This document shows positions 2,366-63,456 of a stretch of DNA of 64,000 nucleotides, piece by piece. The translations under genes and the position numbers were made by a program. The stretch is from IMG/VR virus record IMGVR_UViG_3300023257_000007, positions 62,001 through 126,000 of that record; one strand, written 5' to 3'. Each line of letters opens with the position of its first letter. Positions within the stretch are counted from its first letter, which is position 1. The notes under the pieces are model-generated. The model ran no database searches and had not been told where the DNA came from. It saw only the letters and a list, made by a program, of their open reading frames with translations.

Positions 2366-2419
2366 AATAATTTTTTTATTTTAATTATATATTATGAAAA
2401 ATTGGTCCATATCGAAAAT

Positions 2420-2806
2420 TTATTCAGGCAAAGAATTTAAAGTGTTAGGAATATTATCAGATTTTAATATAATATCTGTTACTTTATTAATATATTCTTC
2501 TTGTTTTACAGATTCTAATTTTCTAAGGTATTCCTTCTCTTTTTCTTTATCTTTTAGATGTTCTTTATATTTATCCCAATTACTTTTTGTAATTTTGGAA
2601 AGCACATCTTCAGCTCTTAATATTATATTTTGTAGTCTTATTTGAGCTTTTTCAGGATTTTTAGCTAGTTTAGATAAACTATCCATTTCAAGTAGTAAAT
2701 CATCACACTCTTTTACAGTATCTTCAGAACCACCAAAAATCATGAATAGACGCTTAGCGGCGTCTATTCTATTATACATTATATTAACTCTTTTTCTAAC
2801 TGACAT
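2420..2806 (-). CDS. Hypothetical protein
   Basis: 128-aa ORF with TAATG coupling to the upstream gene. Confidence 0.7.
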   Translation of the reverse strand: MSVRKRVNIMYNRIDAAKRLFMIFGGSEDTVKECDDLLLEMDSLSKLAKNPEKAQIRLQNIILRAEDVLSKITKSNWDKYKEHLKDKEKEKEYLRKLESVKQEEYINKVTDIILKSDNIPNTLNSLPE

Positions 2807-3468
2807 TAAATCATCTTATCTATATTTTCTATTCTAATTTTACCTTTACCAACTAAACTTTCACAACTTCTACTAAAATCTGCTAAAAAATCATTATTTT
2901 CTTTAACAAATAATTTATAATCTATTTGTTTATCTTCATTAATATACTCAGTTGAAGGTAAATAATTAACATTCCAACCTTCATCTAATTTAGTAATAAG
3001 TATTTTACTTTCTGATACAAAAAAGTTTTTAATATCTTTTTCAGACAAATATTCTAAAAAATAATCTTCTGGAATATTTTTCAAATCATTAAGTTGAATA
3101 GTTGATTCTTTAATAACATAGTCTTCATAACTAAATACCTCTTTAGGTTCAGGAATCATATTAAGAGAATCTAATTCATCATATAAAGTATTAACCATAT
3201 TATTTAAAACAGGTAAACTATACATATGAATAGATGAATGTATAGTTGATTCTAATAAAAGATCACTAGTATTTTTAGTATGTTCTTTAATATAATTTTC
3301 AATTTTATCAATCAATTCTTCTTTACCTTTTAAAGTTAAATTTGAAGGTTCATTATCATATTGAATAACAATTTTTTCTTCTATTAATCTACCAATAGTT
3401 TTTCTTAATTGAGAAGGATATTTCTTAGTATATTCTTCTTTTTTATCGTAATTACTAAATTTTTTCAT
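2806..3468 (-). CDS. Hypothetical protein (MKKFSNY N-terminus)
   Basis: 220-aa ORF in a tight operon. Confidence 0.7.
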   Translation of the reverse strand: MKKFSNYDKKEEYTKKYPSQLRKTIGRLIEEKIVIQYDNEPSNLTLKGKEELIDKIENYIKEHTKNTSDLLLESTIHSSIHMYSLPVLNNMVNTLYDELDSLNMIPEPKEVFSYEDYVIKESTIQLNDLKNIPEDYFLEYLSEKDIKNFFVSESKILITKLDEGWNVNYLPSTEYINEDKQIDYKLFVKENNDFLADFSRSCESLVGKGKIRIENIDKMI

Positions 3469-3470
3469 AA

Positions 3471-3791
3471 TTATTTCTTAATTTTTTTACTTTCTACGAT
3501 TAATTCACCATCTTTCCCAACTATTGTTTCATATATTTCAACATCTTTTTCAACTTTTCTTTGAAGTCTTGTTGGATTAGATTTAATTGATTCTAATGTG
3601 AGTATCTTATTTTGAATTTCTTCTCTTTTAATTAAAACAGATAAAGAATTAACTAAATCTTCTTTTCCCTTAATTTCTCCTTCATCTATTTTCAAAGATT
3701 GTTCTATTATATCATAAACATCATACCTAACTTTATCATTTCCTGTATATGGATTATTATTTTCATTTAAAGAATTACTAAAAGTTTTCAT
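3471..3791 (-). CDS. Hypothetical protein (MKTFSNSLNE N-terminus)
   Basis: 106-aa ORF; TATATA at 3813-3818 upstream. Confidence 0.7.
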   Translation of the reverse strand: MKTFSNSLNENNNPYTGNDKVRYDVYDIIEQSLKIDEGEIKGKEDLVNSLSVLIKREEIQNKILTLESIKSNPTRLQRKVEKDVEIYETIVGKDGELIVESKKIKK

Positions 3792-3935
3792 AGTTCTATT
3801 TTAATTTATTTGTATATATAAATTTTTAAAACTCATTCAAGAATCAAAATTTTTCATTTTTTTATTCTGAAAATTTTGATATATTTATATCAAATTACAA
3901 AACAAAAAATATTACATATATAAACTAAATAAACA

Positions 3936-6092
3936 ATGGAAGAAAATACAGAAAATACAAATCAACCAAAATACCCTTGGTTAGCAAAATTTGCAATAAA
4001 TTTAAATGATTATGCATCTAAAGGTAAATTAAAACCAGTAATAGGTAGAGACGAAGAAATTCGTAGAATATTACAAATACTTTCCAGAAAAACTAAAAAT
4101 AATCCAATAGTTATAGGTGAATCAGGTGTTGGAAAAACATCTGTTGTTGAAGCATTAGCCCAAAGAATAGTTGATGGTGATGTACCTGAAAATCTTAAAG
4201 ATAAAGTAATAGCATCTTTAGATTTAGCTACATTAGTTGCTGGTGCAAAATATAAAGGTGAATTCGAAGAAAGAATACAAACCATTGTAAAAGAAATAAT
4301 TGAATCTAATGGTCAAATTATACTTTTTATTGATGAAATTCACACATTAGTTGGTACAGGTGGTGGAAATGGTGCAATGGATGCTGCAGGTATTTTAAAA
4401 CCTATATTATCAAGAGGTGAAATTAGAGCAATTGGTGCAACAACTATTGATGAATATAAAAAATCAATTGAGCAAGATAGAGCATTAGATAGAAGATTTC
4501 AAACAGTTATGATTGATGAGCCTGATAAATTTCAATCAATTTCAATTTTAAGAGGTATTAAAGATAGTTTTGAAAAACATCATGATGTTAGAATAGTAGA
4601 TAGTGCTATTATAAGTGCTGTAGAATTATCAATAAGATATGTATCTGATAGATTTTTACCAGATAAGGCTATTGATTTATTAGATGAAGCTTGTTCTAAA
4701 TTAAGATTAGAAATAAATTCTGTACCAGGTGAAATTGATGAAATATCTAGAAGAATTCAACAATTAGAAATTGAAAGAGAAGGTTTAAGAATGGAAGGAA
4801 ACAATAAAAAAGTTTCAAAAATTACATCTGAAATAGATTCATTAACTGAAAGCTTAAAAACTTTTAATTTACAATGGAACAAAGAAATAGAACTTGTTGA
4901 TAATATTAAAATATTAAAAAAAGATTTAGCTGGATATAATAATGATATCGAAAAATTTAGAAATGAAGCATATTACGAACATGTAGCAAAATTACAATAT
5001 GGTATAATACCAAAAGTAGAACTAGAAATAAAAGAACTAGAAGATAAACTTAAAGAAATACAAAAAGGTGTCCAACTTGTTGATGAAGAAGTTGATGGTG
5101 AAGATATAGCAGAAATTGTAGCAAAATGGACTGGTATACCAGTTTCAAAAATGTTAAAATCTGAAAAAATAAAATTAGTAAATCTTGAAGATGAATTACA
5201 TAAAAGAATTATTGGCCAAAATGAAGCTGTAACAGAATTATCAAACGCAGTAAGAAGAAGTAGATCCGGATTACAAGATACAAAAAAACCAATTGGTTCT
5301 TTTATTTTCTTAGGAACCACCGGAGTTGGTAAAACAGAAACAGCAAAAGCACTAGCTGAATATTTGTTTGATGATGAAAATGCAATGGTAAGAATTGATA
5401 TGAGTGAATATATGGAAAGACATGCCGTAGCTAAATTAATCGGTCCCCCTCCAGGTTATATTGGTTATGAAGAAGGTGGTCAATTAACAGACCAGGTAAG
5501 AAGAAAACCTTATTCAGTAATTTTATTTGATGAAATTGAAAAAGCTCACCCTGATACATTTAATACCTTATTACAAGTATTAGATGATGGTAGATTAACT
5601 GATAATAAAGGTAGAACTGTTGATTTTAAGAACACTATTATTATTATGACTTCTAATATTGGTTCTCATATTATTAGAGAAAATTTTGAAAAATTAACTG
5701 ATGAAAATAGAGAAGAAGTTATTAAAAAAACCAATGATGAAGTAATGGAAGTTTTAAAAAATACTGTAAGACCAGAATTTTTAAATAGAATTGATGAAAT
5801 TGTGACATTTCAACCATTAACAAGAGAAGAAATTAAAAAAATTGTAGTATTACAATTTAACTCAATCAAGAAAAGATTACCAGACGTTGAATTAGAATTA
5901 ACAGAAAAAGCTCTTGATTATTTAACATTAAAATCATATGATCCTCAATTTGGAGCTAGACCAGTTAAGAGAACATTACAAGATACAATTTTAGATGATT
6001 TATCAATGTCAATTTTAAAAGATGAAGTTAAAAAAGATGATGCTATTTTAATTGACTATGATGGTGAGAAAATAACATTTGACAATAAATAG
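3936..6092 (+). CDS. clpB: ClpB AAA+ disaggregase lacking the N-terminal Clp-repeat domain
   Basis: PVIGRDEEIRR, GESGVGKT, FIDEIH, GATT, ALDRRFQ, FLPDKAIDLLDEA, middle coiled-coil, GTTGVGKTE, RIDMSEY, FDEIEKAHP, GRLTD, FGARP. Confidence 0.96.
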   Translation: MEENTENTNQPKYPWLAKFAINLNDYASKGKLKPVIGRDEEIRRILQILSRKTKNNPIVIGESGVGKTSVVEALAQRIVDGDVPENLKDKVIASLDLATLVAGAKYKGEFEERIQTIVKEIIESNGQIILFIDEIHTLVGTGGGNGAMDAAGILKPILSRGEIRAIGATTIDEYKKSIEQDRALDRRFQTVMIDEPDKFQSISILRGIKDSFEKHHDVRIVDSAIISAVELSIRYVSDRFLPDKAIDLLDEACSKLRLEINSVPGEIDEISRRIQQLEIEREGLRMEGNNKKVSKITSEIDSLTESLKTFNLQWNKEIELVDNIKILKKDLAGYNNDIEKFRNEAYYEHVAKLQYGIIPKVELEIKELEDKLKEIQKGVQLVDEEVDGEDIAEIVAKWTGIPVSKMLKSEKIKLVNLEDELHKRIIGQNEAVTELSNAVRRSRSGLQDTKKPIGSFIFLGTTGVGKTETAKALAEYLFDDENAMVRIDMSEYMERHAVAKLIGPPPGYIGYEEGGQLTDQVRRKPYSVILFDEIEKAHPDTFNTLLQVLDDGRLTDNKGRTVDFKNTIIIMTSNIGSHIIRENFEKLTDENREEVIKKTNDEVMEVLKNTVRPEFLNRIDEIVTFQPLTREEIKKIVVLQFNSIKKRLPDVELELTEKALDYLTLKSYDPQFGARPVKRTLQDTILDDLSMSILKDEVKKDDAILIDYDGEKITFDNK

Positions 6093-6151
6093 TAGTTTAT
6101 ATATTTGTAGAGAAATTAATTTTTTGGATGGCTTTTTTAATATATACAGAT

Positions 6152-6790
6152 ATGAAATATTTAAAAAAATATGAATCTTGGCAGAGTATGGTTGGCACTA
6201 AGTTAAATGTCGGTCTTAAAAAGCATGTAGGTTTATATGATAAAGATCCAGAAACAGTAAAAGAATATTTTACAGAATTAAAAAATGATGAAAATTATAA
6301 AATACTAGACAAGAAGAGTAAAAATGAATATTTAGAACAATATATGAAATACTTTTTGAGACATTTTAAAGAAAATTCTGAATATTCTGAATTAATAAAA
6401 GATGAAGTGTTTAAAGATATCTATCCTTCAATAATACGTAATGAAGTTGGTTACAATTACAAAAATCTAGATGAAGAAACATTGAAATACTTTATAGGAT
6501 TTTCTGGTAAGAAAAATAAAGGTATGTACTATTCACTAGAAAAATTAGCAAAAATTTTAAATACAAATCAATATAATGATGAAAGACAAAATTTTTTCAT
6601 AGAACTGTATATAGATCAGTTAGTCTTATTTAAAAATGCAAATAAAAGTAAAGATTTATCTAGAATTATATACTCAAAAATATTTCAATTATTTACAGCA
6701 GGTAAAACAGGAAAAAACATGATTAAAATCACAGAAATGTTAGAAAAAAAAAGGAATTCTTACGAAAGAAATATCAAATTATGTTTTTAA
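6152..6790 (+). CDS. Hypothetical protein (MKYLKKYESW N-terminus)
   Basis: Start moved from the track's 6128 to the ATG at 6152, just after TATATA (6141-6146). Confidence 0.7.
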   Translation: MKYLKKYESWQSMVGTKLNVGLKKHVGLYDKDPETVKEYFTELKNDENYKILDKKSKNEYLEQYMKYFLRHFKENSEYSELIKDEVFKDIYPSIIRNEVGYNYKNLDEETLKYFIGFSGKKNKGMYYSLEKLAKILNTNQYNDERQNFFIELYIDQLVLFKNANKSKDLSRIIYSKIFQLFTAGKTGKNMIKITEMLEKKRNSYERNIKLCF

Positions 6791-6803: not shown

Positions 6804-7178
6804 TTGCGTTCAGATCCATTAGGAATAACAGATTTTATCACGAGACCTGAATTTCTATCAAAGTTATCTGAATATTATGATGGTGATATAAATAATATCA
6901 TAACTAAAAATATCTTACAAAGAATCGGTTTTTATAATGCTAGTTTAAACTTCTCAAAAGGCACTTCATATGCTACTACAGGTCCTAATTACTATGATGT
7001 AGAAAAACTCGTTTCTGGTTTTTTGAAACAACCAGATTTTTCTCTAGAAGATTATATTGAAAAATTCATTGATGCTGACGAAGATAGATGGCGAAGTATA
7101 AGGAAAACGTATAAAACAGATAAATTAAAAGAAAAATATAAATACTTTAGCGAAGCTGGTAAACTCGGATTATTTTAA
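6804..7178 (+). CDS. Hypothetical protein with C-terminal EAGKLGLF motif
   Basis: 124-aa ORF with TTG start; C-terminus resembles those of the 22531 and 23226 ORFs. Confidence 0.65.
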   Translation: MRSDPLGITDFITRPEFLSKLSEYYDGDINNIITKNILQRIGFYNASLNFSKGTSYATTGPNYYDVEKLVSGFLKQPDFSLEDYIEKFIDADEDRWRSIRKTYKTDKLKEKYKYFSEAGKLGLF

Positions 7179-17053: not shown

Positions 17054-17054
17054 G

Positions 17055-17126
17055 TGGAGCCTACGGGAATCGAACCCGTGTCTTCTGAGTGCAAGTCAGA
17101 AATAATAGCCTCTATACGAAGGTCCC
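17055..17126 (-). tRNA. trnA: tRNA-Ala(TGC)
   Basis: GGGACCT/AGGCTCC acceptor with G3:U70 (one A:C mismatch); anticodon arm TCTGA-CTTGCAC-TCAGA; GGTTCGATTCC. Confidence 0.92.
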
Positions 17127-17133
17127 ATTTTTG

Positions 17134-17207
17134 TACTCCCGATTGGACTCGAACCAACAACTTCTGCCATGTAACGGCAGCACTCTACGCAATTGAGCTA
17201 CAGGAGC
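17134..17207 (-). tRNA. trnV: tRNA-Val(TAC)
   Basis: GCTCCTG/CGGGAGT; CTGCC-GTTACAT-GGCAG; GGTTCGAGTCC. Confidence 0.92.
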
Positions 17208-17212
17208 GTTTG

Positions 17213-17286: not shown

Positions 17287-17290
17287 ATAG

Positions 17291-18104: not shown

Positions 18105-18108
18105 TTTG

Positions 18109-18182: not shown

Positions 18183-18192
18183 TTATTTCTTG

Positions 18193-18265: not shown

Positions 18266-18273
18266 ATATATAG

Positions 18274-18353: not shown

Positions 18354-18362
18354 ATTTATTTG

Positions 18363-18744: not shown

Positions 18745-19575
18745 TTAAAAATTTTTTGTCATTTTATTTTCAAAAAAGGAAAACAACTTTGATATATATC
18801 GAGAATAATTTTTTATTTGATTGTTGTAGATTTTTAAAAAGTTATCTATAAATAATTTTTGTTCTTTTTTAGAAGAATTATTTATAAATAATTCTTCTTC
18901 TTCACCATGTTTTAATTTTTTTAATAATTCAAACGCTGATAAAAATTTGTTCAATTTAAGTTCTGATAAATCATTAAAAAGTTGCAATAAATTTATATCC
19001 TTTAAATAATAAAAATTTTGATAAAAATCGCTTTTTTTAACTAAATTATCAATTGTTTCATTTTCATTTAATTCATAATTTTTTATTTCGTAAACAATTT
19101 TACTAAAATCCGCTTTTACTTCAGCTGACGATAAAGAATAAAACACATCTATGATTGTAGATATTTGTTTATCATTTTTAAAAAAATCATACATTGAAAT
19201 TATTGACATTTCATCAACACTTGTTAATTCTTTGCCTTTATTTTTCACCCAATCATAAGCATGAAACAATTCGTGATTTAATAATCCATGAGTTGTCTTA
19301 TATGAATCTAAAACCAAATATATAATCGAACCATTTGGAATATATTCTGATTTATGTTGATCAAATGATGAAAATCTATTATTCAATTTTGCATAATCTT
19401 CTTTGAATTCTATAATTATTTTGGATATACCTATATTAAGTATTTTAACATCTATTTCTTCAATATTTTTTAAATCCTCTTTATTTTCAACATAATTTAT
19501 TATATAAGTAGTTAATTCTTCAACTTCTGTTGAATATCCTGATCTTTCTATAATAAAATTACCAAAATTTAACAT
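18745..19575 (-). CDS. Hypothetical protein with HExxH motif (possible zincin-like metallopeptidase)
   Basis: LLNHELFHAYD; N-terminus MLNFGNFIIE; TATATA at 19581-19586. Confidence 0.65.
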   Translation of the reverse strand: MLNFGNFIIERSGYSTEVEELTTYIINYVENKEDLKNIEEIDVKILNIGISKIIIEFKEDYAKLNNRFSSFDQHKSEYIPNGSIIYLVLDSYKTTHGLLNHELFHAYDWVKNKGKELTSVDEMSIISMYDFFKNDKQISTIIDVFYSLSSAEVKADFSKIVYEIKNYELNENETIDNLVKKSDFYQNFYYLKDINLLQLFNDLSELKLNKFLSAFELLKKLKHGEEEELFINNSSKKEQKLFIDNFLKIYNNQIKNYSRYISKLFSFFENKMTKNF

Positions 19576-22534: not shown

Positions 22535-23226
22535 AATATTCCAAGTTTAGCTGCTTGTATTTCTGCTTTATATTTTTCTTTTTGTTTCTTTGTTAATAAA
22601 GTTTTAATATTATTAATAGCAAAAGGATAATTCTTTAGTATTACATTTATTATATTAGATTTTTCAAGATGAACATTTAGATCTCTGAAAATCCAACTAT
22701 TTTCTGGTAATTTCGATATTCTAATAGCAATCGCTTTTTCTAATTCTTCTGTTGTTTTATAACTCTGTTCTACCCACATCCTACCATATTTTGAATCTAA
22801 ATAACCATAGCCATATTTTATAATAACATCTTCGATAGGAAGATTATCAAATCTATAATCATCGCCACCCAAATTAGTTTGACCATCTGTGAGTTTATAT
22901 AAAAACATATCCATAGATCCATCACTTTGAAGAAAACCTTTTATATGTGTAGTAGATTGCAGATCTTGTAATAATACTTTTTTTCTAAATATATCTTCAA
23001 ATTCAATTGGTGTTATTCCTAAACCCTCAGCAACAAAACTCACAACATTATCATAAAGTTCATCAGCATCTGGTAATCTATCATATGTAACAAAAGAAGA
23101 GGCAGAATAATAATAATTATTATCTTCGTTAAATTTATCGACTTGTTCTTTTATAAGATGAAGAAATTCATCTACATCCATGTTTTTGTGTGTTCGTAAT
23201 ATAGTATGTTTATCGTAATTTTTCAT
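22531..23226 (-). CDS. Hypothetical protein, paralog of 23226-23957
   Basis: Shared DG..D.F.YK..LGG..D.II.YGYGY...YG..W block; C-terminal AAKLGIL. Confidence 0.75.
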   Translation of the reverse strand: MKNYDKHTILRTHKNMDVDEFLHLIKEQVDKFNEDNNYYYSASSFVTYDRLPDADELYDNVVSFVAEGLGITPIEFEDIFRKKVLLQDLQSTTHIKGFLQSDGSMDMFLYKLTDGQTNLGGDDYRFDNLPIEDVIIKYGYGYLDSKYGRMWVEQSYKTTEELEKAIAIRISKLPENSWIFRDLNVHLEKSNIINVILKNYPFAINNIKTLLTKKQKEKYKAEIQAAKLGIL

Positions 23227-23957
23227 TATAGTATTCCCATGTTTCTTGCTTCTATAAAACCATGTTGATCTTTTAGTAAAGGTTTTATTTCATCTGACTC
23301 ACTTGATCTTCCATCAATAATATCTATTACATTTTTAGGTATAATAGTTGTTGATGTTGTGTTTTTTAGAATCTTAATCAAATTCTTTAAACTACACATT
23401 TTAAGTGAATTATTTAAATGTTCATCAACCTCAGGATAATCTTCATTATTTAAACATCTTATAATTTTATTAGTTGCATCATCTTCAAAACTTTTAAAAG
23501 TATAATTGGAGTTAGTTATCCATAATTTACCGTATTCTGTTTTTGTGTAACCATATCCATATCTAATTATATTATCATATTCGCCGCCTGTATCTTTTAA
23601 GTTAAAACCACCTAATTCTACATCTTTATTATCGCCAAGTATTTTATAAAAGAAATAATCGACTTCTCCGTCCATCGCATAAAAACTATAAGTATTATCG
23701 TGGAATTGTTCAATAGTCATATGTTTTTTAATATGTTCAATGAGTTCGAATTTACTACCACTCCATTGACCATGTTCGTGAAAATATTCATATATATGTT
23801 CTACAACGCCATCATATATATATTTTAAAGTATCACCTCTAGAAGCTAAATTTGTACCACTAAAACCACCATTAATACTCAAACATTCTTTTAAATCCCA
23901 TATAAACTTTTCCCATACAGATTTTTTTTCTAAAAAATTATCATAATTAGTTAACAT
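23226..23957 (-). CDS. Hypothetical protein, paralog of 22531-23226
   Basis: Same shared block; N-terminal MLTNYDNFLE, C-terminal EARNMGIL; TATATA at 23963-23968. Confidence 0.75.
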   Translation of the reverse strand: MLTNYDNFLEKKSVWEKFIWDLKECLSINGGFSGTNLASRGDTLKYIYDGVVEHIYEYFHEHGQWSGSKFELIEHIKKHMTIEQFHDNTYSFYAMDGEVDYFFYKILGDNKDVELGGFNLKDTGGEYDNIIRYGYGYTKTEYGKLWITNSNYTFKSFEDDATNKIIRCLNNEDYPEVDEHLNNSLKMCSLKNLIKILKNTTSTTIIPKNVIDIIDGRSSESDEIKPLLKDQHGFIEARNMGIL

Positions 23958-25976: not shown

Positions 25977-26417
25977 TTATTCATAAACTGTTATAGTTTT
26001 TTCCTTAGGGAATACCTGCAATACTTTTTCATATGATGTTGTTTCATCATCAAAATCGCCTTGTCCATATTTATGATAGTTCCAAGAATAATAATTTTCA
26101 CCTACTTTTATAATGTACTCATTTGTCCAAGCACCATGATCCATATCTGTATCTACAAATGTGTTATGTTGAATTATACTAATATTATATTTTTTACACA
26201 AATCTATAACATCTTCGTATCTACTCCAATTCACCTTGTGTATGAATTCATAAGCATCACTTACATCTTTAAAATATTTATCTATTAGTCCCATTTTATG
26301 AGCCTCTTCCAATTCTGTTTTTGACATACCATCAGAAAATATATTATTTAAAAATTCAGTTAAATCAGTATATTCTTGTTTCTCATTTTCGTTTAAAAAG
26401 CTATCAAATTTCTTCAT
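25977..26417 (-). CDS. Hypothetical protein (MKKFDSFLNE N-terminus)
   Basis: 146-aa ORF. Confidence 0.7.
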   Translation of the reverse strand: MKKFDSFLNENEKQEYTDLTEFLNNIFSDGMSKTELEEAHKMGLIDKYFKDVSDAYEFIHKVNWSRYEDVIDLCKKYNISIIQHNTFVDTDMDHGAWTNEYIIKVGENYYSWNYHKYGQGDFDDETTSYEKVLQVFPKEKTITVYE

Positions 26418-36284: not shown

Positions 36285-39200
36285 TTATAAAAATCCACCG
36301 GATTCTATATCACCTTTTTTCAGAATTGTAATGTTATTAACAATTATACCCATTCCTTTAATGATTTCAATATATGTATCTAATACACCCATTTGAAGAT
36401 CAATTATGTAATTTGTATTATTTGTTATATCCATTACATTTTTGTAATCGTATAATGCATCTGAATCTTGTAATGATTTGCAAATCTCATCAGCTCTGAA
36501 CTTAATTTCAGCTCTAATTTCAGGAGTATTAAATCTCCATTGGTATCTTAGTAACATATCATATAACTGATTCTCTAGTTCAATTAACACTTCTCTTGAG
36601 TGAATAACACTTAGTGAACTGTAAGGGAATACTTGAGCAGTATTTTCAGAATTAATGCAGTAACCTGCATTTCTCTTATATGTTATTGGATTTGCACCCA
36701 TTTGGAACATGTTTTCTAAATCAGTATTACTGAAGTCCATTTCTGTTCCACCGATACCGTTAACTCTACCATTAGTTACACCAGCCATAATTGTCCAAGG
36801 TTGTAATCCTGGACCACCAGTAAACTTCTGCATATAAGTTGTAGCAGCGTATGATGAAGGTGGTACATATTTAGGTACACCATTATCACTTACTCTAACA
36901 TATGGGAAGAAATATCCAACACATGTTGCACCAACTCCACCAGCGAAGTCATATAAGTAAGGAGGACTAAGGTCTTCATTACCACCTTTCATTATGAAAT
37001 ATGTACTAACTGCACCTGTTTGTTCACCAGCAGCATCAACTTCCATGAAGTTAGGATTTACAGACTTTTTGAAGTCTCTAAGACTTGGCATATTTATGAA
37101 GCCTAAGCAGTTTAATTTTTCACCACATAAGTCAACTAATTGTTGTTTTGGAATGACATTAGATGAAACACCACCTACACTAACACTATAAGGAGCTAAA
37201 CCTAAACCAAATGAATCAACTAAATATCTCCATGTGATTTTATTTTTATTTACTAAAGCTTTAGATAAATTTGTTGTACTATCTAATACTGTTAAAATTG
37301 TATTTTGTCTAGCGTCAGTGCCATCAGGCATTGATAAACTACTAATCTTAAATGGTCTTATATCAATTCCTTTATATGTTGAAACGTAACTATCAATACT
37401 TGAATATTGAGTTGTCATCCAATCTGCTGTTGTTGCTGTAGCACTTGGTATGGCATCATTATCAGTTATCTTTATTGAAGCATCTGTTTCAATTATTTTC
37501 AATGTACTATCACTAGGATCTACTGTTGTATTTAAAATTCTAGTTAACCTTTTAGGTACTCTACCATTTGAATATAAACCAGTACTTGAATTATAAGTAG
37601 CATCTGGATCTGTAGGATCAGTTGTTGGAATATAAGCTTCTAACATATCACCACGTTTTAGTTCAGCATATCTTGTTCTATCTACTTTAATAGTTAAAAC
37701 ATTTGCTGGATAATTACTAGTAACAAAACTTTCAATTTCTACTGTTTGTCTATAACTTCCAATATCTGATACAACTGATAAAGCATAAGCATATATTGTA
37801 CTCCAATTATAAACTGGATCTGGATCACTTGAACCAGCAGAACTTGCATTTTCTACGAAATCAACTGTTAAGTTATCAGATGAATCAATCCACATCTTAA
37901 GATAAATCTTATTAGTCGAAGCATTTGCATCTACAAAGTAATCATCGTTAGCTATTTCACCGCTATAGAAATCTAAATACATTGTTGAGTATTTAGCTAC
38001 GACACCTGCTGCATTCTCACCTGTTATACCAGAAGTACTTAAAGTTTCAAGTGGTGCGTCTATTGTAATCATTCTATCTGTGGAATTTGTAGCGTGCATT
38101 ACGAACTCGTCATCTGTATAGAATATTAATATCTCACTACCATTATAAAATTCGGCAGGATTTGTAATATTTGTTAATGTTATTGTATAAGGATCATCAG
38201 TTATCACGTAATTTGTACTAATTTGATGTTTGTATCCTGTTCCACTATTAATAATAACTGCTTTATTATTTGCTAGAGTAGTTGATAATTCATCATGATA
38301 TTGTAATTCTCTTACTGAATTATAACTTGTTCCTGTCGCATTAGGGAATGTTAATGTTAATGTGCTATTTGGAGTACTATGTTCGATAGTTAATCCCATT
38401 GTTTGATAAACATTACTTAAAACTATTGGATTATAAGTTGATGTTGTGGTACCACTAACATATAGAAGTTCTACATATCCTAAAACAATAGCAGAAGTGT
38501 TACTAAATGTTGGTTGTGCAAGAGCACCTGGTGTGCTTTCTGTACCTTCATATGTTAATATATCTTCTGAACCTTTCAACATATAAACTACATCAACTCT
38601 ACCTACTGTAGAACCTGTAGTAACCAATGTTAATGGCTCGAATTGAACTGTTGTTGTACCCGTGTCTAATGTTTGTTTTGTGTCTGCAACAAAATATGGA
38701 TCAGCACCAAATGAAAAGGCTTGATTATTTATTGTTGCTAAAACATCTGTTGTTATAGTTATTCCAGAAACTGCAGTTCCATTAGGATCTAATAATGTGA
38801 AATTATTAATACCAGGAGCAGAAACTGAAGGATATACTACTGTATATTCTAAAGTAGAATCAACACCAGTGAATGATTTATTGAATGTTATGGTTGCACC
38901 ATTTATACTTGTGATAGCACTTACTACTGTAGAAGATGCCAATGTATCACCACTTACAATACTCGTAATGTAAAGATTTTCAAATGATGTATCACCTGTG
39001 ACAACATCATTAACATACCAGTTTGTGAATCCACCTGTTGTTCTACCGTAACTAGCATTCCATGCAGCTGTTAAATCTGCATCATAATTAGCAAAAACGT
39101 TTGATTCTGCATCTAAGAACTTATTAGCCAATGATACAGTTTCTGTAACTGATTGGTTATATGACATAAAATTAATACTATCTAATTGAGTACCAACTAA

Positions 39201-40163
39201 TCCGTCACCAATTATATCAATTTTACCGTTTGGATAATCTGCACTCATTAATAAATCTTCATTATATGAGCAGAAAATACCTGTTTTATCTGTGTCTGCA
39301 TTAATATTACTCTTAATGTAAAGATCTCTATTATTTAAATCTCTAAAGTAAGGTAATAGTGATGTATCATAATATCCTAATATTGTTATGTTAGTTTCAG
39401 ATATGAAATCACTAACTGTTCCTTTAATTAAACCTGTAGTATCAAAATAAGAACTCCATGTTGTATCAACTGATAATGAATTATAATCTGTCCAATCACC
39501 TTCAACTATAATAACTGTAACTAAATAATCTGAAATCCAGTCAGTTGGATTAATATAAGTAGGAACTTTAGTTCTACCACCATACCACCATTCGGCAGTA
39601 ACATCAAATCCTGTTAAACTTGATTTAAACATAAATACTGTAACAGCCTTGTTGTTAAGGTTTGTAAAATTAAGTAATCTATCATCTGACCATGTTGTTA
39701 GACTCTTAAGATAATCTTGGAATGCAATATCATCTCTTTCCCAGAAATCTTGTCTATTGAATATCTTACTATATGGTATAGTAACTTTTGTACCTTGTGA
39801 AGTTGGATAGTTTGCATATTGAGATGCAACTGACATTGAATCATATTCAATTAGATCTCTCGTATCATTAGTTGACAGTAAATTAAGTGCCCAAATCGGA
39901 CCACTCTGTAACATTTTTAAACATGTTCTGTGGAAATAAGAACCTTTGTTTTCTAATTGTCTATCTAAATCACCGAACACAGTTGCAAACGTAGTTGGAT
40001 TGTCTATATAAACTGGCTTATTGATAGGCCCTTTCTTTGAAAAACCTGGTACTAGATTTATAAGAATATCTTGTACTGGTAACTCAATAGGTGACTGATT
40101 TATTTCTTCTATGAAAATGTCAGGTCTTTTATATTTTCCTAAATCTTTTTGTTGAATTGGCAT
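36285..40163 (-). CDS. Contractile tail sheath protein (gp18-like), enlarged to 1292 aa
   Basis: N-terminal RPDIFIEE..VPGFSKKGP.NKP; C-terminal WTIMAGVTNGR, ANPI, HSREVL..LE, YQWRFNT..R; TATATA at 40186-40191. Confidence 0.9.
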   Translation of the reverse strand: MPIQQKDLGKYKRPDIFIEEINQSPIELPVQDILINLVPGFSKKGPINKPVYIDNPTTFATVFGDLDRQLENKGSYFHRTCLKMLQSGPIWALNLLSTNDTRDLIEYDSMSVASQYANYPTSQGTKVTIPYSKIFNRQDFWERDDIAFQDYLKSLTTWSDDRLLNFTNLNNKAVTVFMFKSSLTGFDVTAEWWYGGRTKVPTYINPTDWISDYLVTVIIVEGDWTDYNSLSVDTTWSSYFDTTGLIKGTVSDFISETNITILGYYDTSLLPYFRDLNNRDLYIKSNINADTDKTGIFCSYNEDLLMSADYPNGKIDIIGDGLVGTQLDSINFMSYNQSVTETVSLANKFLDAESNVFANYDADLTAAWNASYGRTTGGFTNWYVNDVVTGDTSFENLYITSIVSGDTLASSTVVSAITSINGATITFNKSFTGVDSTLEYTVVYPSVSAPGINNFTLLDPNGTAVSGITITTDVLATINNQAFSFGADPYFVADTKQTLDTGTTTVQFEPLTLVTTGSTVGRVDVVYMLKGSEDILTYEGTESTPGALAQPTFSNTSAIVLGYVELLYVSGTTTSTYNPIVLSNVYQTMGLTIEHSTPNSTLTLTFPNATGTSYNSVRELQYHDELSTTLANNKAVIINSGTGYKHQISTNYVITDDPYTITLTNITNPAEFYNGSEILIFYTDDEFVMHATNSTDRMITIDAPLETLSTSGITGENAAGVVAKYSTMYLDFYSGEIANDDYFVDANASTNKIYLKMWIDSSDNLTVDFVENASSAGSSDPDPVYNWSTIYAYALSVVSDIGSYRQTVEIESFVTSNYPANVLTIKVDRTRYAELKRGDMLEAYIPTTDPTDPDATYNSSTGLYSNGRVPKRLTRILNTTVDPSDSTLKIIETDASIKITDNDAIPSATATTADWMTTQYSSIDSYVSTYKGIDIRPFKISSLSMPDGTDARQNTILTVLDSTTNLSKALVNKNKITWRYLVDSFGLGLAPYSVSVGGVSSNVIPKQQLVDLCGEKLNCLGFINMPSLRDFKKSVNPNFMEVDAAGEQTGAVSTYFIMKGGNEDLSPPYLYDFAGGVGATCVGYFFPYVRVSDNGVPKYVPPSSYAATTYMQKFTGGPGLQPWTIMAGVTNGRVNGIGGTEMDFSNTDLENMFQMGANPITYKRNAGYCINSENTAQVFPYSSLSVIHSREVLIELENQLYDMLLRYQWRFNTPEIRAEIKFRADEICKSLQDSDALYDYKNVMDITNNTNYIIDLQMGVLDTYIEIIKGMGIIVNNITILKKGDIESGGFL

Positions 40164-43650: not shown

Positions 43651-44022
43651 TTATCCAGCTCTACCAGGTTTGTGAAGAGTAGTGAAACGTTTCCATTGAC
43701 TTATGAAATCAGGTTTACTATTAGTTTTAGCTATTTCCGATTCTTTCTTGTTCTTTTCTCTTTCTCTTCTATTTCTCTCAATGGTTGATTTAGTATCAGA
43801 TTTTTCTTTTTTATCAATTTTTTCATCTTCTTCATCAAGTAAATCTATATCATCTTCATGAAGATCAACTACACCAGCATCACTAACTGTATCTTTACTA
43901 GGAGCACCAGTTTGACCTGCACCAAACCAATTAGAATTACCATCTAATCTATTATTTGCAGTATTAGATTGATCTAATGGAACATTATGTTGCCATTCTA
44001 AATAAAATTTTAAATGTTTCAA
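43651..44022 (-). CDS. Hypothetical protein (MKHLKFYLEW N-terminus)
   Basis: 123 aa; TATATA at about 44042. Confidence 0.7.
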   Translation of the reverse strand: MKHLKFYLEWQHNVPLDQSNTANNRLDGNSNWFGAGQTGAPSKDTVSDAGVVDLHEDDIDLLDEEDEKIDKKEKSDTKSTIERNRREREKNKKESEIAKTNSKPDFISQWKRFTTLHKPGRAG

Positions 44023-44310: not shown

Positions 44311-44590
44311 AATCAATTTTACATTAATAATAGCAATATTAAACACATTTGCTTTTATAATTAATCCACTATCTATTATAGGTCTAGTAAATTTATTTTT
44401 TGCAATTTACTTCATAAGAAGCGTTTATAAACATTATAGGAAAAAATATGTGGAAAAAATTACTATTAAAAAGAAAAAAGAAGAAGAATTTGTGAAAAAT
44501 TTTAGAAATTCAATAAAAAAACACAAAAAATTCGAAAAAGAATATGATTATATCAAAATTGATAAATCACCCGTTGAATTTAGAAATTAA
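44297..44590 (+). CDS. Small membrane protein (two TM segments)
   Basis: Hydrophobic N-terminal hairpin, basic tail. Confidence 0.65.
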   Translation: MKKIKINFTLIIAILNTFAFIINPLSIIGLVNLFFAIYFIRSVYKHYRKKYVEKITIKKKKEEEFVKNFRNSIKKHKKFEKEYDYIKIDKSPVEFRN

Positions 44591-45493
44591 TTTAGTAACT
44601 AATTTACTTCCTGAATTTGTCAAACTAAATAACTTATTATCATTTTGATCTATTAATCCACGGTGATATAATTCAATTATATTATTAACTAATTCTTTAA
44701 AATCTAATTTATGTAAATATAAATCATTTTTTAAAAATGATATTTTTCTAGGTTTAATATATAGTTTATATAATATTGCAAATTCTAATTTTGTCACCTT
44801 ATTTGAACTATACACAAATCTTTCATATAGAAATTCTACATGAAATTCTTCATTATTTCTAAATATTTTCATTATTAAATTGTCGAATTTATTTTTAATC
44901 TTATTAAAAATATCAGTTCCATAATATTTTAAACCAACTAAAGTAGCACCAACTCCAGTTAAGGTTACAGATTTTAAAAATTCTACTAAATTTATATCAT
45001 TTATATTTACATCTACTAAAACACTAATAAAAGGTACTAATAAAATAGAATAAATAAATAAATCTCTTATTCCTTTTATAACTTTACCAAAATTACTAGC
45101 TAATATAGAAAATAATTTTTTTACATTTTTTATAACATCAATAATCATTTTTAACAATTCATCTAAGCCTTTTTCATTAATAATTAATTTTGCTTTATGA
45201 ATAGAATTTTTATTTTCTTTTAATAAAATTGCTAAAGCTGTTATTGTTAATAAAATAATATCAAAAACTCTTAATTCATATCCTGTATTCTTAATAATAC
45301 TCTCAATAAAAGGGTAAAAAGCAGTAACGGATGTACCAAAAGTGGCTATGAAATAATAATTTAAACCTATTTCTTTAATTACATTTTTTTGTTCTTTTTG
45401 CCAAGTTGAAATTTCTCTTTTTTCAAATAATTTATACAGAATCTCACTTTCATTATCTTCATTATAACTTTTATAAGAATTAATATGTTTCAT
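44567..45493 (-). CDS. Hypothetical membrane-associated protein (MKHINSYKSYNE N-terminus)
   Basis: Several hydrophobic segments; TATATA at 45500-45505. Confidence 0.7.
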   Translation of the reverse strand: MKHINSYKSYNEDNESEILYKLFEKREISTWQKEQKNVIKEIGLNYYFIATFGTSVTAFYPFIESIIKNTGYELRVFDIILLTITALAILLKENKNSIHKAKLIINEKGLDELLKMIIDVIKNVKKLFSILASNFGKVIKGIRDLFIYSILLVPFISVLVDVNINDINLVEFLKSVTLTGVGATLVGLKYYGTDIFNKIKNKFDNLIMKIFRNNEEFHVEFLYERFVYSSNKVTKLEFAILYKLYIKPRKISFLKNDLYLHKLDFKELVNNIIELYHRGLIDQNDNKLFSLTNSGSKLVTKLISKFNG

Positions 45494-57033: not shown

Positions 57034-57864
57034 ATGATTATTTGTGAAATTTGTAAAAAAGAATTAAAAAATAGAAAATCTTTAGGATCACATTTGTGTA
57101 AATCACATAAAGAAATATCAACTAAAAAATATTATGACAAATATTTTCTCATAGAAAATGAAAATATTTGTAAAAATGAAAATTGTAATAATACAACTAA
57201 TCAATTTAAAGGTTTAACTAAAGGTTATATTAAATCATACTGTTCAATTTCTTGTGCTAGAAAATCAAAAGAAGTTATAGAAAAACAGAAAAAAACATGT
57301 TTAGAAAAATATGATAATGAAAATTATAGAAATATAAACTCATATAAAAAAACGTGTTTAGAAAAATATGGTAAAGAAAATGCTTTATGTAAAGGCACTA
57401 AATCATATAATAAAAAAATAAATACATGTTTAGAAAAATATGGCGTTGAAAATGTATTTAGTGATGATGATATATGTAAAAAAATAAGATTAACAAATGA
57501 AAAAAGTGGTTTTTGGCAAAAAAGAGATGTGTTAAATAATTTTCAACATTATTATGAAGAAGTTAAGAAACTAACAAACAAAAACAAAAAATTATTATTT
57601 GAAAAATGGAATGGTGACGATTATTATGATAATGAATATATTTTTAATAATTTTGTATTAAATAATAATGATAACAATTATCCTAGTGTAGATCACAAAA
57701 AATCAATAAAATATTGTTTCATAAATAAAATATCACCAAAAAAGTGTTCAAATATTGACAATTTGTGCATTACTAAAAGAATTATTAATATTATTAAAAA
57801 TAGTGATGATGAATTAGAATTTAAAAATCAATTAAAACAAATAGTAATAGATAAAAAAGATTAA
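57034..57864 (+). CDS. Putative homing endonuclease-like protein: C2H2 finger, CLEKYG repeats, C-terminal HNH-like DH..N motif
   Basis: CEIC..SHL..SH, three KTCLEKY(G/D) repeats, PSVDHKKS..NL.IT..IN..K; own TATATA at 57019-57024. Confidence 0.72.
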   Translation: MIICEICKKELKNRKSLGSHLCKSHKEISTKKYYDKYFLIENENICKNENCNNTTNQFKGLTKGYIKSYCSISCARKSKEVIEKQKKTCLEKYDNENYRNINSYKKTCLEKYGKENALCKGTKSYNKKINTCLEKYGVENVFSDDDICKKIRLTNEKSGFWQKRDVLNNFQHYYEEVKKLTNKNKKLLFEKWNGDDYYDNEYIFNNFVLNNNDNNYPSVDHKKSIKYCFINKISPKKCSNIDNLCITKRIINIIKNSDDELEFKNQLKQIVIDKKD

Positions 57865-62196: not shown

Positions 62197-62646
62197 TTAA
62201 TTGTATTTCGTTCTTCGATTTACTTTTTGAGTTATTTCAAAAAGTAAATCAAGAATATAATTGTCACATTCTTCATTTTTCGTTTCTTCTATTGGAACTG
62301 GATTTTCGAAATTTGGATTTTTTTCCGCTCTTTTTTGATCATCTCTAAACCATTGATCTTCATTAATATAATATTCAAATCTCAAACCATTATCTAAAAT
62401 AATAATTATCATATCATTTTTACTTTCACTAGAATCAGATGAATTACTAAGTCTAACATCTTTAATTTTACCACCAGGTAAAGTTTGTAAAACTTTCCCA
62501 ATATATTCACTAAAATCTAGATCAGATCTATTATTTCTTTGAAATTCTGATTTCCAGTCATCAAATTCATGTCTATCATCTTGATTTAAAGAACCATAAA
62601 TATCTTTAAGTTTATTAAAATTCTCGAATTTTTTTAAGTATTTCAT
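62197..62646 (-). CDS. Hypothetical protein (MKYLKKFENF N-terminus)
   Basis: 149 aa; TATATA leader cassette upstream. Confidence 0.72.
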   Translation of the reverse strand: MKYLKKFENFNKLKDIYGSLNQDDRHEFDDWKSEFQRNNRSDLDFSEYIGKVLQTLPGGKIKDVRLSNSSDSSESKNDMIIIILDNGLRFEYYINEDQWFRDDQKRAEKNPNFENPVPIEETKNEECDNYILDLLFEITQKVNRRTKYN

Positions 62647-62688
62647 AATCGTTTTTTTTTTTTGTGGTTATTGATATTATATATATTA

Positions 62689-62961
62689 TTAAGTTGAAAT
62701 ATTTTTAGAGAAATTTTTTACAAATGGTATATAAATTTCTCTATAAGGTGACTCATTTTTAATTTGAGGGTGTTTATTAACTAGTTTTTTTAACCTATTT
62801 AATTGTTCATCTATATCATCTATTTTAGTAATATCATCTAACATTTCTTCTAAATCTTTTATTTCTAATTTATAAAGACCAAGTTGATCGCTTACTGATT
62901 TCCAATCTTTATCATTATTGAATGTATCATTCCATTCGTTGAATTTTCTTAAGTATTTCAT
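62689..62961 (-). CDS. Hypothetical protein (MKYLRKFNEW N-terminus)
   Basis: 90 aa; leader near-identical to that of the previous gene. Confidence 0.72.
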   Translation of the reverse strand: MKYLRKFNEWNDTFNNDKDWKSVSDQLGLYKLEIKDLEEMLDDITKIDDIDEQLNRLKKLVNKHPQIKNESPYREIYIPFVKNFSKNIST

Positions 62962-63028
62962 AATCTTTTTTTTGGGTTATTGATATTATATATCAACAAA
63001 AAAAAATGGTTTTTAACAAGATTGAAGA

Positions 63029-63433
63029 TTAAAATAATTCTTTTTCTAATTCTTTCATACATTGAATAACACCAAATTTGGTACCTTCCAATATAAAATC
63101 ATATAAAGAAAATATATTATTACTCTTTGGTGAATCATCAAACCAATTATTATCATTACAAATATCATCAACATCACTTTGATATTTCAAATAAAAATTA
63201 AAAATATCTCCATTCTCAACAAAATCTTGTAATTTACCTGGTTCTGGGTCATTAATGTAATCTCTGATAAAATTTTGAACATTAACCAATTCAGTTGTAT
63301 TATCAACTGAATTATCTAATAAATCTAATACTCCTCTCTTTAAAGAAATATATTGTTCGGTTAGTTTATCTTTAAGAGTATCTTCAAGATTCTCTTTTAT
63401 CATTTTTGAATATTCTTCTGTAAATTTTTTCAT
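63029..63433 (-). CDS. Hypothetical protein (MKKFTEE N-terminus)
   Basis: 134 aa; TATATA 5 nt upstream. Confidence 0.72.
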   Translation of the reverse strand: MKKFTEEYSKMIKENLEDTLKDKLTEQYISLKRGVLDLLDNSVDNTTELVNVQNFIRDYINDPEPGKLQDFVENGDIFNFYLKYQSDVDDICNDNNWFDDSPKSNNIFSLYDFILEGTKFGVIQCMKELEKELF

Positions 63434-63456
63434 AAGACTATATATTATTATATTTT

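What the first reader, a model, noticed from the sequence alone, without database searches (positions are those of the whole stretch)
2386..63444. Recurring N-terminal MKxLKxF/YxxF-like peptide on TATATA-driven genes: probable capsid-targeting signal
Seen: unrelated late ORFs start with similar peptides: MKKFSNY (3468), MKTFSNSLNE (3791), MKYLKKYESW (6152), MLNFGNFIIE (19575), MLTNYDNFLE (23957), MKKFDSFLNE (26417), MKHLKFYLEW (44022), MKHINSYKSYNE (45493), MKYLKKFENF (62646), MKYLRKFNEW (62961) and MKKFTEEY (63433). Most have TATATA 5-35 nt upstream. Established: T4 internal proteins carry a roughly 10-aa capsid-targeting sequence (MKTYQEFIAE-like) cleaved after Glu by the prohead protease. 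Inference: these are head-packaged proteins delivered at infection, a large uncharacterised injected proteome that includes an HExxH protein and a membrane protein.
Basis: partly seen in the sequence, partly recalled or inferred. Interest (0 to 1): 0.6.

Follow-up and report, generated by a model that had tools for sequence, protein, structure and literature searches.

The report
Capsid-targeting-like tags in a megaphage
About one gene in eight of this uncultivated giant phage starts with a short conserved peptide that closely resembles the phage T4 signal for loading proteins into the head, which suggests, without yet proving, that it carries and injects a large set of proteins.

Summary
The window lies in a 345-kb, 25% GC contig of a Mahaphage-type megaphage from salt-lake metagenomes. 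Its nearest record is the 735-kb LR756501. Two N-terminal tags recur on otherwise unrelated proteins.

- Class A, MK[YH]LKT[YF][EN][ES], is on 44 of 493 genes. The strict form is on 26, against fewer than 0.1 expected, and never occurs inside a protein.
- Class B, aromatic-x-x-aromatic-[ILV]-x-E (for example MKKFDSFLNE), is on 22 genes against 2.4 expected.

Both tags recur in related megaphages, vary at synonymous sites, and are enriched behind a TAATATATA promoter that also precedes the capsid, portal, protease and sheath genes.

The phage has T4-type head machinery: a gp23-like capsid protein and a gp21-fold protease. The protease is fused to a scaffold of twelve Y[ILV]AE repeats. Class B matches that repeat, the conserved [LMIV]-N-E|N site in the capsid propeptide, and the T4 signal MKTYQEFIAE in register.

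The capsid-targeting reading is therefore the best explanation: good for class B, weaker for class A. Binding, cleavage, packaging and injection are untested. A separate C-terminal tail, ..K[LM]GLL, on 62 genes is unexplained.

The parts
6152..6790 (+). Class A tagged gene, 212 aa, MKYLKKYESW; TATATA at 6141-6146, 5 nt before the ATG
   Evidence: Only near-identical homologues exist among 5.8 billion proteins. No Pfam or PHROG family.
43651..44022 (-). Class A tagged gene, 123 aa, TTG start, MKHLKFYLEW; TATATA at 44042-44047
44567..45493 (-). Loose class A tag MKHINSYKSYNE on a 308-aa protein with hydrophobic segments at about residues 72-167; TATATA at 45500-45505
62197..62646 (-). Class A tagged gene, 149 aa, MKYLKKFENF; TATATA at 62678-62683
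62689..62961 (-). Class A tagged gene, 90 aa, MKYLRKFNEW; TATATA at 62987-62992
18745..19575 (-). Class B tagged gene, 276 aa, MLNFGNFIIE|R, with HELFH at residue 101; TATATA at 19581-19586
   Evidence: Orthologues at 52-55% identity keep M1, L2, F4, F7, I8, E10 and R11.
25977..26417 (-). Class B tagged gene, 146 aa, MKKFDSFLNE|N; no promoter of its own (operon); internal EEAHKMGLI at residues 37-45
3471..3791 (-). Near-class-B gene, 106 aa, MKTFSNSLNE|N (F4, L8, E10, but no second aromatic residue); TATATA at 3813-3818
23226..23957 (-). Near-class-B gene, 243 aa, MLTNYDNFLE, which also ends in the C-terminal tail ..FIEARNMGIL; TATATA at 23963-23968
2806..3468 (-). It fits neither motif definition and is the second gene of the operon headed by 3791.
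63029..63433 (-). It fits neither strict definition; TATATA at 63439-63444.
1736..2365 (-). 209-aa protein with two copies of the scaffold repeat (VDYSEYIAD, INYCEYIA), a paralogue of the protease-scaffold repeat region; TATATA promoter
   Evidence: E 7e-10
113..649 (-). 178-aa protein whose first ~40 residues copy the capsid-protein propeptide (KW.PVL...WM..YAE.H)
   Evidence: E 1e-8
36285..40163 (-). Tail sheath gene, 1292 aa, behind TTAATATATAGG. It marks the TATATA element as the promoter of structural genes.

Best explanation
The recurring N-terminal peptides are most likely cargo tags of a T4-type head-assembly system.

Shown:
- The phage builds its head with a gp23-like capsid protein.
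- One 811-aa protein joins a gp21-fold prohead protease to a scaffold of twelve 14-residue repeats (..Y-S-E-Y-[ILV]-A-E..).
- Class B tags (M-x(1-5)-aromatic-x-x-aromatic-[IL]-N/x-E) copy one such repeat.
- They also match the conserved [LMIV]-N-E|N site that ends the capsid propeptide.
- They have the same register as the proven T4 signal MKTYQEFIAE.
- Class A (MK[YH]LKT[YF][EN][ES]) is a clade-wide variant. In relatives it often runs on into a class-B-like aromatic-x-x-aromatic-[IL]-x-E.
- The tags are conserved as amino acids on unrelated protein bodies.
- They are enriched behind the TATATA promoter that drives the structural genes.

Inferred:
- The short amphipathic tag docks the protein into the scaffold core while the prohead forms.
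- The protease then cuts after the Glu, as it would cut the scaffold repeats and the capsid propeptide.
- The freed protein stays in the head and enters the host with the DNA.

The cargo would include a CCA-adding enzyme, a NUDIX hydrolase, an HExxH protein, leucine-rich-repeat proteins and dozens of orphans.
For: - Tags exist at the stated places and far exceed chance.
- Protein bodies are unrelated: 38 of 43 class A cores are BLASTP singletons, and lengths run from 70 to 513 aa.
- Synonymous codons at tag positions vary as in the genome at large, for example TAC 26% against 10% and AAG 25% against 13%.
- Head machinery: Pfam Gp23 at E 5e-25. Peptidase_S77 scored 23.5 bits, below its cut-off, but the AF2 model matches T4 gp21 (5JBL, E 7e-7, TM 0.71), followed by herpesvirus proteases.
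- The Y[ILV]AE repeat occurs 12 times here and 10-14 times in all 63 related protease-scaffold genes.
- A pattern taken from the scaffold repeat, not from the tags, is enriched 9-fold at N-termini here and 10.6-fold in relatives.
- In 40 of 44 related capsid proteins the last Glu, at about residue 43, lies in [LMIV]-N-E|N-V and is followed by 70-95 residues without Glu.
- T4 ipII and ipIII start with MKTYQEFIAE, and that signal is cut once and loads foreign proteins (PMC8442874, PMC9958956).
- Orthologues of the HExxH protein keep F4, F7, I8 and E10.
- Tags are extensions on enzymes. The NTase domain starts at residue 44 and the NUDIX domain at about 97, and untagged NUDIX paralogues exist.
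- Class A tags occur 12-13 times in each of two complete 640-676-kb relatives, against 1 control hit each, often behind TATATA.
- Promoter association. TATATA also precedes the capsid, protease-scaffold, portal, head-closure and sheath genes.
Against: - There is no direct evidence of binding, cleavage, packaging or ejection.
- Class A mostly reads Y-N-E or [YF]-E-x, without an aliphatic residue at P3.
- 64 tagged genes in half a genome is far more cargo species than in any studied phage.
- Tagged proteins are acidic (median pI 5.3), unlike the basic T4 internal proteins.
- The bodies of tagged proteins are not depleted in candidate cleavage motifs (ratios about 0.9, not significant).
- TATATA also drives non-structural genes (ClpB-like, GMP-reductase-like, homing endonucleases), so it may be a general phage promoter rather than a strictly late one.
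- Nearly half of class A proteins also carry an unexplained C-terminal tail, which hints at a different or additional logic.
- The more distant relative Tenacibaculum phage PTm1, which has the same protease-scaffold fusion, shows no such tags near its head genes.
Confidence: 0.5

Rival explanations
1. The peptides are by-products of composition and translation start. In a 25% GC genome without Shine-Dalgarno use, AAA/AAT/TAT/TTT-rich first codons give MK.., K/Y/F/N-rich N-termini that merely look alike.
For: Lys is the second residue in 36% of genes, and K, Y, I, F and N are generally enriched in positions 2-7.
Against: The strict class A count is 26, against at most 0.07 expected from the position-wise composition of these same N-termini, with none internal. 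The scaffold-derived pattern is enriched 9-10-fold in two independent gene sets. Orthologues and complete related genomes keep the same residues.
Confidence: 0.05
2. The tags are real protein-level signals but serve another purpose. They could be a degron or recognition tag for the phage's two-ring ClpB/ClpA-like AAA+ protein (window 3936-6092). They could also be a handle for a host or phage hub, or a localisation signal inside the infected cell. On this reading the likeness to the scaffold repeat and to the T4 signal comes from all of them being short amphipathic helices.
For: A ClpA/B-like protein of 718 aa lies between tagged genes. Class A lacks the aliphatic-x-Glu site. 20 of 44 class A proteins also carry a conserved C-terminal tail (expected 5.5), as if both ends were recognised. 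The tagged proteins are acidic and their bodies are not depleted in cleavage motifs.
Against: No ClpP gene is on the contig. In relatives the class A tag occurs without the C-terminal tail. Class B agrees in register with three independent head-assembly sequences: the scaffold repeat, the capsid propeptide site and the T4 signal. Both classes are enriched behind the promoter of the structural genes.
Confidence: 0.25
3. The tags mark mobile 5' gene cassettes. A promoter plus the first ten codons would be copied or recombined onto new genes, as proposed for the plastic internal-protein loci of T-even phages, and the shared peptide would persist mainly by descent rather than by selection for a function.
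For: Tagged genes cluster in arrays, for example genome 0-20, 100-120, 140-160, 260-280 and 300-340 kb. Many share promoter, spacing and tag. Paralogues carry different tags: g024 has class B, while g162 and g474 have class A. Most tagged genes are orphans.
Against: Synonymous sites in the tag vary as freely as elsewhere while the amino acids stay fixed. The tag is kept across genomes whose capsid proteins are only about 65% identical. Half of the class A genes have no promoter directly upstream. This idea also fits alongside a targeting function rather than replacing it.
Confidence: 0.15

Closest known systems
Capsid targeting sequence (CTS) of phage T4 internal proteins IPII and IPIII (MKTYQEFIAE), together with the short N-terminal propeptides of IPI, Alt and gp24
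   Same: A peptide of about 10 residues at the extreme N-terminus of otherwise unrelated proteins. It has hydrophobic residues at 4, 7 and 8 and Glu at 10 (class B). The phage has a gp23-like capsid protein and a gp21-fold protease. The genes sit behind a TATA-rich phage promoter.
   Different: Here there are 64 tagged genes in half a genome, against a handful in T4, and two tag classes. Class A lacks the aliphatic-x-Glu site. The cargo is mostly acidic and includes enzymes. The protease is fused to its scaffold. Nothing here has been shown experimentally.
Propeptide-directed loading of head and ejection proteins in giant phages phiKZ, 201phi2-1 and SPN3US (cleavage at [S/A/G]-x-E by a gp21-like protease)
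   Same: Giant phages pack tens of protein species, and N-terminal propeptides ending in Glu are removed by a T4-like prohead protease (PMC5694885).
   Different: Those propeptides are mostly 100-160 residues long and are not a shared short tag. No phiKZ-type virion RNA polymerase or inner-body genes were looked for or seen here.
Cargo-loading peptides of encapsulins
   Same: A short conserved terminal peptide on diverse cargo docks it inside an HK97-fold shell. This is a resemblance in principle only.
   Different: Encapsulin peptides are usually C-terminal, bind the shell protein directly and are not cleaved. No sequence similarity was tested or claimed.

Membership tests
T4-type capsid targeting sequence | A short shared peptide at the extreme N-terminus of otherwise unrelated proteins | tested here: met
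   Class A has 44 genes and class B has 22. Class A bodies are unrelated by BLASTP, and the motif never occurs internally in its strict form.
T4-type capsid targeting sequence | Register of MKTYQEFIAE: hydrophobic residues at 4, 7 and 8, Glu at about 10, then the mature protein | tested here: inconclusive
   Class B meets it, for example MKKFDSFLNE, MLNFGNFIIE and MKKYGEFINE, with Glu at 10-13. Class A has Glu at 8 or 9 in 40 of 44 genes, but its hydrophobic residues are at 3, 4 and 7. T4 ipII and ipIII were checked in AF158101.
T4-type capsid targeting sequence | The phage has a gp21-family prohead protease and a scaffold core | tested here: met
   The Pfam S77 score is below its cut-off (23.5 against 27 bits). 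The AF2 model (residues 20-155, pLDDT 65-89) has T4 gp21 5JBL as top hit (E 7e-7, probability 1.00). The scaffold repeats are fused to it. The PTm1 orthologue is annotated as scaffold plus protease.
T4-type capsid targeting sequence | The tag ends in a site of the kind the protease cuts elsewhere in the head proteins | tested here: inconclusive
   Candidate sites by sequence only are Y[ILV]AE x12 in the scaffold and [LMIV]NE|N in the capsid propeptide. Class B [IL]NE|N fits both. Class A YNE|N fits only in its last three residues. The T4 rule (L/I)-x-E is from my own knowledge.
T4-type capsid targeting sequence | The tag is cleaved and the protein is found inside mature heads and ejected | not testable with these tools
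   The phage is uncultivated. Only DNA runs hold it. The complex prediction gave no answer.
T4-type capsid targeting sequence | Expressed with the head genes | tested here: met
   Measured by promoter motif only. At the level of transcription units, TATATA association has odds ratio 7.2 for class A and 3.1 for class B, and no class B gene sits behind a host-type promoter. The same motif lies before the capsid, protease, portal, head-closure and sheath genes.

The most novel reading that the evidence does not exclude
Mahaphage-type megaphages may use a two-part address system. A T4-like N-terminal tag would load dozens of fast-evolving effectors into the giant head. In this lineage a second signal, the C-terminal tail ..E[AGS]xK[LM]GLL, would direct many of them, and many early proteins, to one host or phage hub after entry. 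That hub could be the bacterial sliding clamp, whose binding motif QL[SD]LF/QLGLF the tail resembles (from my memory, untested). The tags would then give a sequence-only read-out of the injected proteome of uncultivated megaphages.
Probability: 0.12. Interest if true: 0.85.

Novelty: new variant of a known kind. Interest (0 to 1): 0.62.

Why it matters
No Mahaphage-type megaphage has been cultivated, and most of their genes are orphans. If these tags are loading signals, they give a way to read from sequence alone which proteins travel in the virion. Here that would be about 13% of the genes, including a tRNA CCA-adding enzyme, a NUDIX hydrolase, a putative metalloprotease and leucine-rich-repeat proteins. 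That would point to an unusually large injected arsenal.

The match between the tag, the scaffold repeat and the capsid propeptide site also suggests a simple mechanism for T4-type targeting, namely scaffold mimicry. The receptor of the T4 signal is still unknown. In the paper library searched, no paper combined 'capsid targeting' with any of the huge-phage or megaphage terms searched.

Tried and rejected
- Complex prediction of protease residues 1-165 with the first 45 residues of the class B protein at 26417 scored 0.00: no answer, and no evidence either way.
- A strict position matrix built from the 12 scaffold repeats found no N-terminal enrichment. The invariant Ala and the flanking VD dominate the score. 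The relaxed pattern did find enrichment.
- Bodies of tagged proteins show no significant depletion of cleavage-like motifs.
- AF2 on a four-member family with class A/B tags and the C-terminal tail gave mean pLDDT 46. The N-terminus is uninterpretable, and only the last ~25 residues are confident.
- Pfam and PHROGs on 20 tagged proteins found only two known domains.
- The word search for two tagged proteins found only near-identical hits or two orthologues.
- The exact class A DNA pattern is absent from LR756501 and PTm1. Looser forms are present in LR756501 and other relatives.
- No RNA runs hold the sequence. Laying salt-lake DNA contigs gave only fragments.
- Translational coupling as the cause of the C-terminal tail is rejected: 35% of tail genes have a tightly following gene, against 30% of others.
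- ClpP is not found on the contig.
- The large profile search against protein representatives was not used. The claim does not rest on absence of relatives.
Full report
**What the window is.** The window is bases 147,476-211,475 of a 344,634-bp IMG/VR contig. It has 25% GC, and CheckV estimates it at 48% complete. With the standard code, 91% of it is coding and I called 493 genes.

The capsid gene is 74% identical at DNA level to LR756501, the 735-kb 'uncultured phage'. That phage belongs to the Mahaphage clade, whose largest members are predicted to infect Bacteroidetes (PMC7162821). IMG/VR holds 69 related loci with capsid proteins 58-73% identical, including records of 640 and 676 kb. Near-identical DNA occurs only in salt-lake and marine DNA metagenomes, and no RNA run holds it.

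**Checking the observation.** One uses a TTG start (44022). Nine have TATATA 5-31 nt upstream.

Class A has the consensus M-K-[Y/H]-L-K-T-[Y/F]-[E/N]-[E/S].
- It starts 44 genes. The strict form starts 26, against at most 0.07 expected from the position-wise composition of these same N-termini.
- The strict form never occurs inside a protein in about 100,000 residues.
- Information content falls away after residue 9-10, and 40 of 44 have Glu at position 8 or 9.

Class B reads aromatic-x-x-aromatic-[ILV]-x-E. I took this pattern from the scaffold repeat described below, not from the N-termini.
- It lies in the first ~20 residues of 22 genes, against 2.4 expected from internal positions (9.2-fold, p = 2e-14).
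- Typical forms are MKKFDSFLNE, MLNFGNFIIE, MKKYGEFINE and MIVSFNEFLNE.

**The tags are protein-level signals on unrelated bodies.**
- With the termini removed, 38 of 43 class A proteins have no BLASTP relative among the others. Lengths range from 70 to 513 residues.
- Synonymous codons at the conserved positions vary at least as much as in the genome at large, so the amino acids are conserved, not the DNA.
- Most tagged proteins are orphans.
- Two class B proteins are enzymes with the tag on an N-terminal extension. One is a tRNA nucleotidyltransferase (CCA-adding type) whose domain starts at residue 44. The other is a NUDIX hydrolase whose domain starts near residue 97. The NUDIX hydrolase has two untagged paralogues.
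- Two orthologues of the HExxH protein, at 52-55% identity, keep M1, L2, F4, F7, I8, E10 and R11.

**The tags are clade-wide.**
- In 868 distinct genes from the related loci, the class B pattern is enriched 10.6-fold at N-termini (25 against 2.4, p = 1e-17). Sixteen of those 25 have a TATATA promoter.
- A class A DNA pattern gives 13 and 12 hits in the two complete 640- and 676-kb relatives, against one control hit each.
- The fetched examples read MKYLKTFESY, MKHLKTFENF, MKYLKTFENLIFE and MKHLKNFDNYLNE. Several run straight on into a class-B-like stretch, which suggests the two classes are variants of one theme.
- The more distant Tenacibaculum phage PTm1 shows no such tags near its head genes.

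**The promoter.** TAATATATA occurs 118 times, counting both strands. Of these, 71 lie within 45 nt upstream of a same-strand start, a zone that holds 3.3% of positions. It precedes the capsid protein, protease-scaffold, portal, head-closure and tail-sheath genes. It also precedes a ClpB-like gene, a GMP-reductase-like gene and homing endonucleases. It is therefore the promoter of the structural genes, but perhaps not strictly late.
- Class A genes are in TATATA-headed units in 36 of 44 cases, against 39% of other genes (odds ratio 7.2, p = 3e-8).
- Class B genes have a direct TATATA promoter in 11 of 22 cases, against 24% (odds ratio 3.1, p = 0.01). None lies behind a host-type TAnnTTTG promoter.

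**The head machinery.**
- The genome has a Pfam Gp23 capsid protein (E 5e-25), which also matches solved T4 gp23 directly.
- Next to it is an 811-aa protein. Its first ~160 residues score just under the Peptidase_S77 cut-off. When folded with 38 relatives, they match the T4 prohead protease gp21 (5JBL) as clear top hit (E 7e-7, TM 0.71), with herpesvirus proteases behind.
- Residues 294-451 of the same protein are twelve tandem 14-residue repeats..N-I-x-Y-S-E-Y-[ILV]-A-E-x-V-D... The Y[ILV]AE unit occurs 10-14 times in all 63 related protease-scaffold genes.
- In 40 of the 44 distinct related capsid proteins examined, the last Glu before a 70-95-residue stretch without Glu sits at about residue 43, in [LMIV]-N-E|N-V. 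The alignment to mature gp23 puts the maturation site in that neighbourhood.

**Comparison with T4.** The gp21 protease degrades the scaffold and removes short N-terminal peptides from the internal proteins and 65 residues from gp23. The ~10-residue signal MKTYQEFIAE loads even foreign proteins into the core and is cut once (PMC8442874, PMC9958956, PMC3012670). I confirmed that T4 ipII and ipIII start with exactly that peptide. That T4 cuts after Glu in (L/I)-x-E is from my own knowledge.

**How it most likely works.** Class B tags agree, residue for residue, with three head-assembly sequences:
- the scaffold repeat ([Y/F]-x-E-Y-[ILV]-A-E-N/H against [F/Y]-x-[E/N]-[F/Y]-[IL]-N-E-N);
- the capsid propeptide site ([LMIV]-N-E|N);
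- the T4 signal (hydrophobic residues at 4, 7 and 8, Glu at 10).

The simplest reading is scaffold mimicry. The tag would let a protein co-assemble with the scaffold core. The protease would cut after the Glu, as it cuts the scaffold and the capsid propeptide. The body would then stay in the head and leave with the DNA.

Two further window genes fit a propeptide-based loading logic. The 113-649 gene carries a copy of the capsid propeptide on a different body (E 1e-8). The 1736-2365 gene carries two scaffold repeats (E 7e-10).

The sequence relations, the machinery and the promoter link are shown. Binding, cleavage, packaging and ejection are inferred.

**Weak points.**
- Class A, the commoner tag, lacks an aliphatic residue two places before the Glu, and its hydrophobic residues sit at 3, 4 and 7.
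- Sixty-four tagged genes in half a genome would be an unprecedented number of cargo species.
- The tagged proteins are acidic (median pI 5.3), unlike the basic T4 internal proteins.
- Their bodies are not depleted in cleavage-like motifs.
- The single complex prediction gave no answer.
- The structure prediction of a tagged family was too poor to show whether the tag is free or packed.

I put the targeting reading at about 0.6 for class B, 0.4 for class A and 0.5 overall.

**A second, unexplained signal.** Sixty-two genes end in [ILVF]-E-[AGS]-x-K-[LM]-G-L-[LMIF]-COOH.
- The strict form is terminal 42 times and internal twice.
- Twenty of these genes also carry class A tags, where 5.5 are expected. 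They are mostly the subtype MKYLKTYNE[NS].
- The tail is not linked to the TATATA promoter. It is concentrated in the early-type region at genome 300-340 kb.
- It is not explained by coupling to a following gene.
- It is essentially absent from four relatives, including the two complete 640- and 676-kb genomes.
- The C-terminal piece of the phage's own DNA polymerase ends in ..EFENFDDWGF. That is like the clamp-binding tail of T4/RB69 polymerases (my memory), so the KLGLL tail is a different signal.
- Its likeness to the bacterial clamp-binding motif is a lead from memory only.

**Novelty.** The T4 signal and propeptide loading in phiKZ-like giants are known (PMC5694885). A short shared tag on about 13% of the genes of a megaphage, in two classes, matching a repeat of a protease-fused scaffold, is not described in the library I could search. 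I rate it a new variant of a known kind.

Noticed in passing
G000 genome-wide; in the window the ends of genes 6804-7178 (+), 22531-23226 (-) and 23226-23957 (-); densest at genome 300-340 kb (loci L019-L021): A conserved C-terminal tail ..[ILVF]-E-[AGS]-x-K-[LM]-G-L-[LMIF]-COOH ends 62 of 493 genes. Twenty of them also carry the class A N-tag. It is nearly absent from four related megaphage records. Function unknown.
   Followed up: partly
L005:5470-7902 (-), outside the window: The prohead protease is fused to a scaffold of twelve 14-residue repeats (NIxYSEY[ILV]AExVD). The repeat is conserved in all 63 relatives examined.
   Followed up: yes
L005:3569-5329 (-) and related loci L025-L091: After the conserved [LMIV]NE|N at about residue 43, the capsid proteins have 70-95 residues without a single Glu. 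By composition about 6 would be expected. This may reflect protection of the mature N-arm from a Glu-specific protease.
   Followed up: partly
window 113-649 (-) and 1736-2365 (-), flanking the clamp-loader gene 649-1626: One small protein copies the capsid propeptide and another carries two scaffold repeats. They lie far from the head module, next to a clamp-loader gene.
   Followed up: partly
window-wide, e.g. 6141-6146, 19581-19586, 23963-23968, 45500-45505, 63439-63444: The distance from the AATATATA element to the start codon is bimodal: 5-9 nt at 26 sites and 15-24 nt at 40 sites. The short class would give leaderless or nearly leaderless mRNAs.
   Followed up: no
genome 300-325 kb (L019, L020); window-relative 156-175 kb: A block of small genes has host-type Bacteroidota promoter elements (..CCGTATCTTTGTAT.., TAnnTTTG) and strong AGGAGG ribosome-binding sites. 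The rest of the genome has neither. It is probably the early region.
   Followed up: no
L012:5084-8280 (-) (genome 127.6-130.8 kb): The family B DNA polymerase is split into at least two ORFs by an intervening 390-aa gene (phrog_22677). Its C-terminal piece ends ..EFENFDDWGF. Similar acidic-aromatic tails end other genes, e.g. ..NYNDWDF (window 47798-48139) and ..ENDDFWN (window 11569-12636).
   Followed up: partly
window 34479-36200 (-) and 57034-57864 (+), plus six more genes elsewhere in G000: A family of eight paralogous homing-endonuclease-like genes (DUF7487, phrog_3339), most behind TATATA promoters. One relative lies next to the capsid gene, as in PTm1.
   Followed up: no
window 17054-17361 and 18108-18436 (-): Seven tRNA genes in two clusters: Ala, Val x2, Arg, Gly, Thr and Pro.
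   Followed up: no
window 3936-6092 (+): A two-ring ClpA/B-type AAA+ protein (AAA, AAA_lid_9, AAA_2 and ClpB_D2-small domains) sits behind a TATATA promoter, between tagged genes. No ClpP was found on the contig.
   Followed up: partly
L005:239-580 (-), L010:9721-10317 (-), L021:10855-11331 (-): Three paralogous class A tagged proteins contain leucine-rich repeats (..LPELPKGL..LYCxxNQLT..). At least two of them end in ..KMGLY.
   Followed up: no
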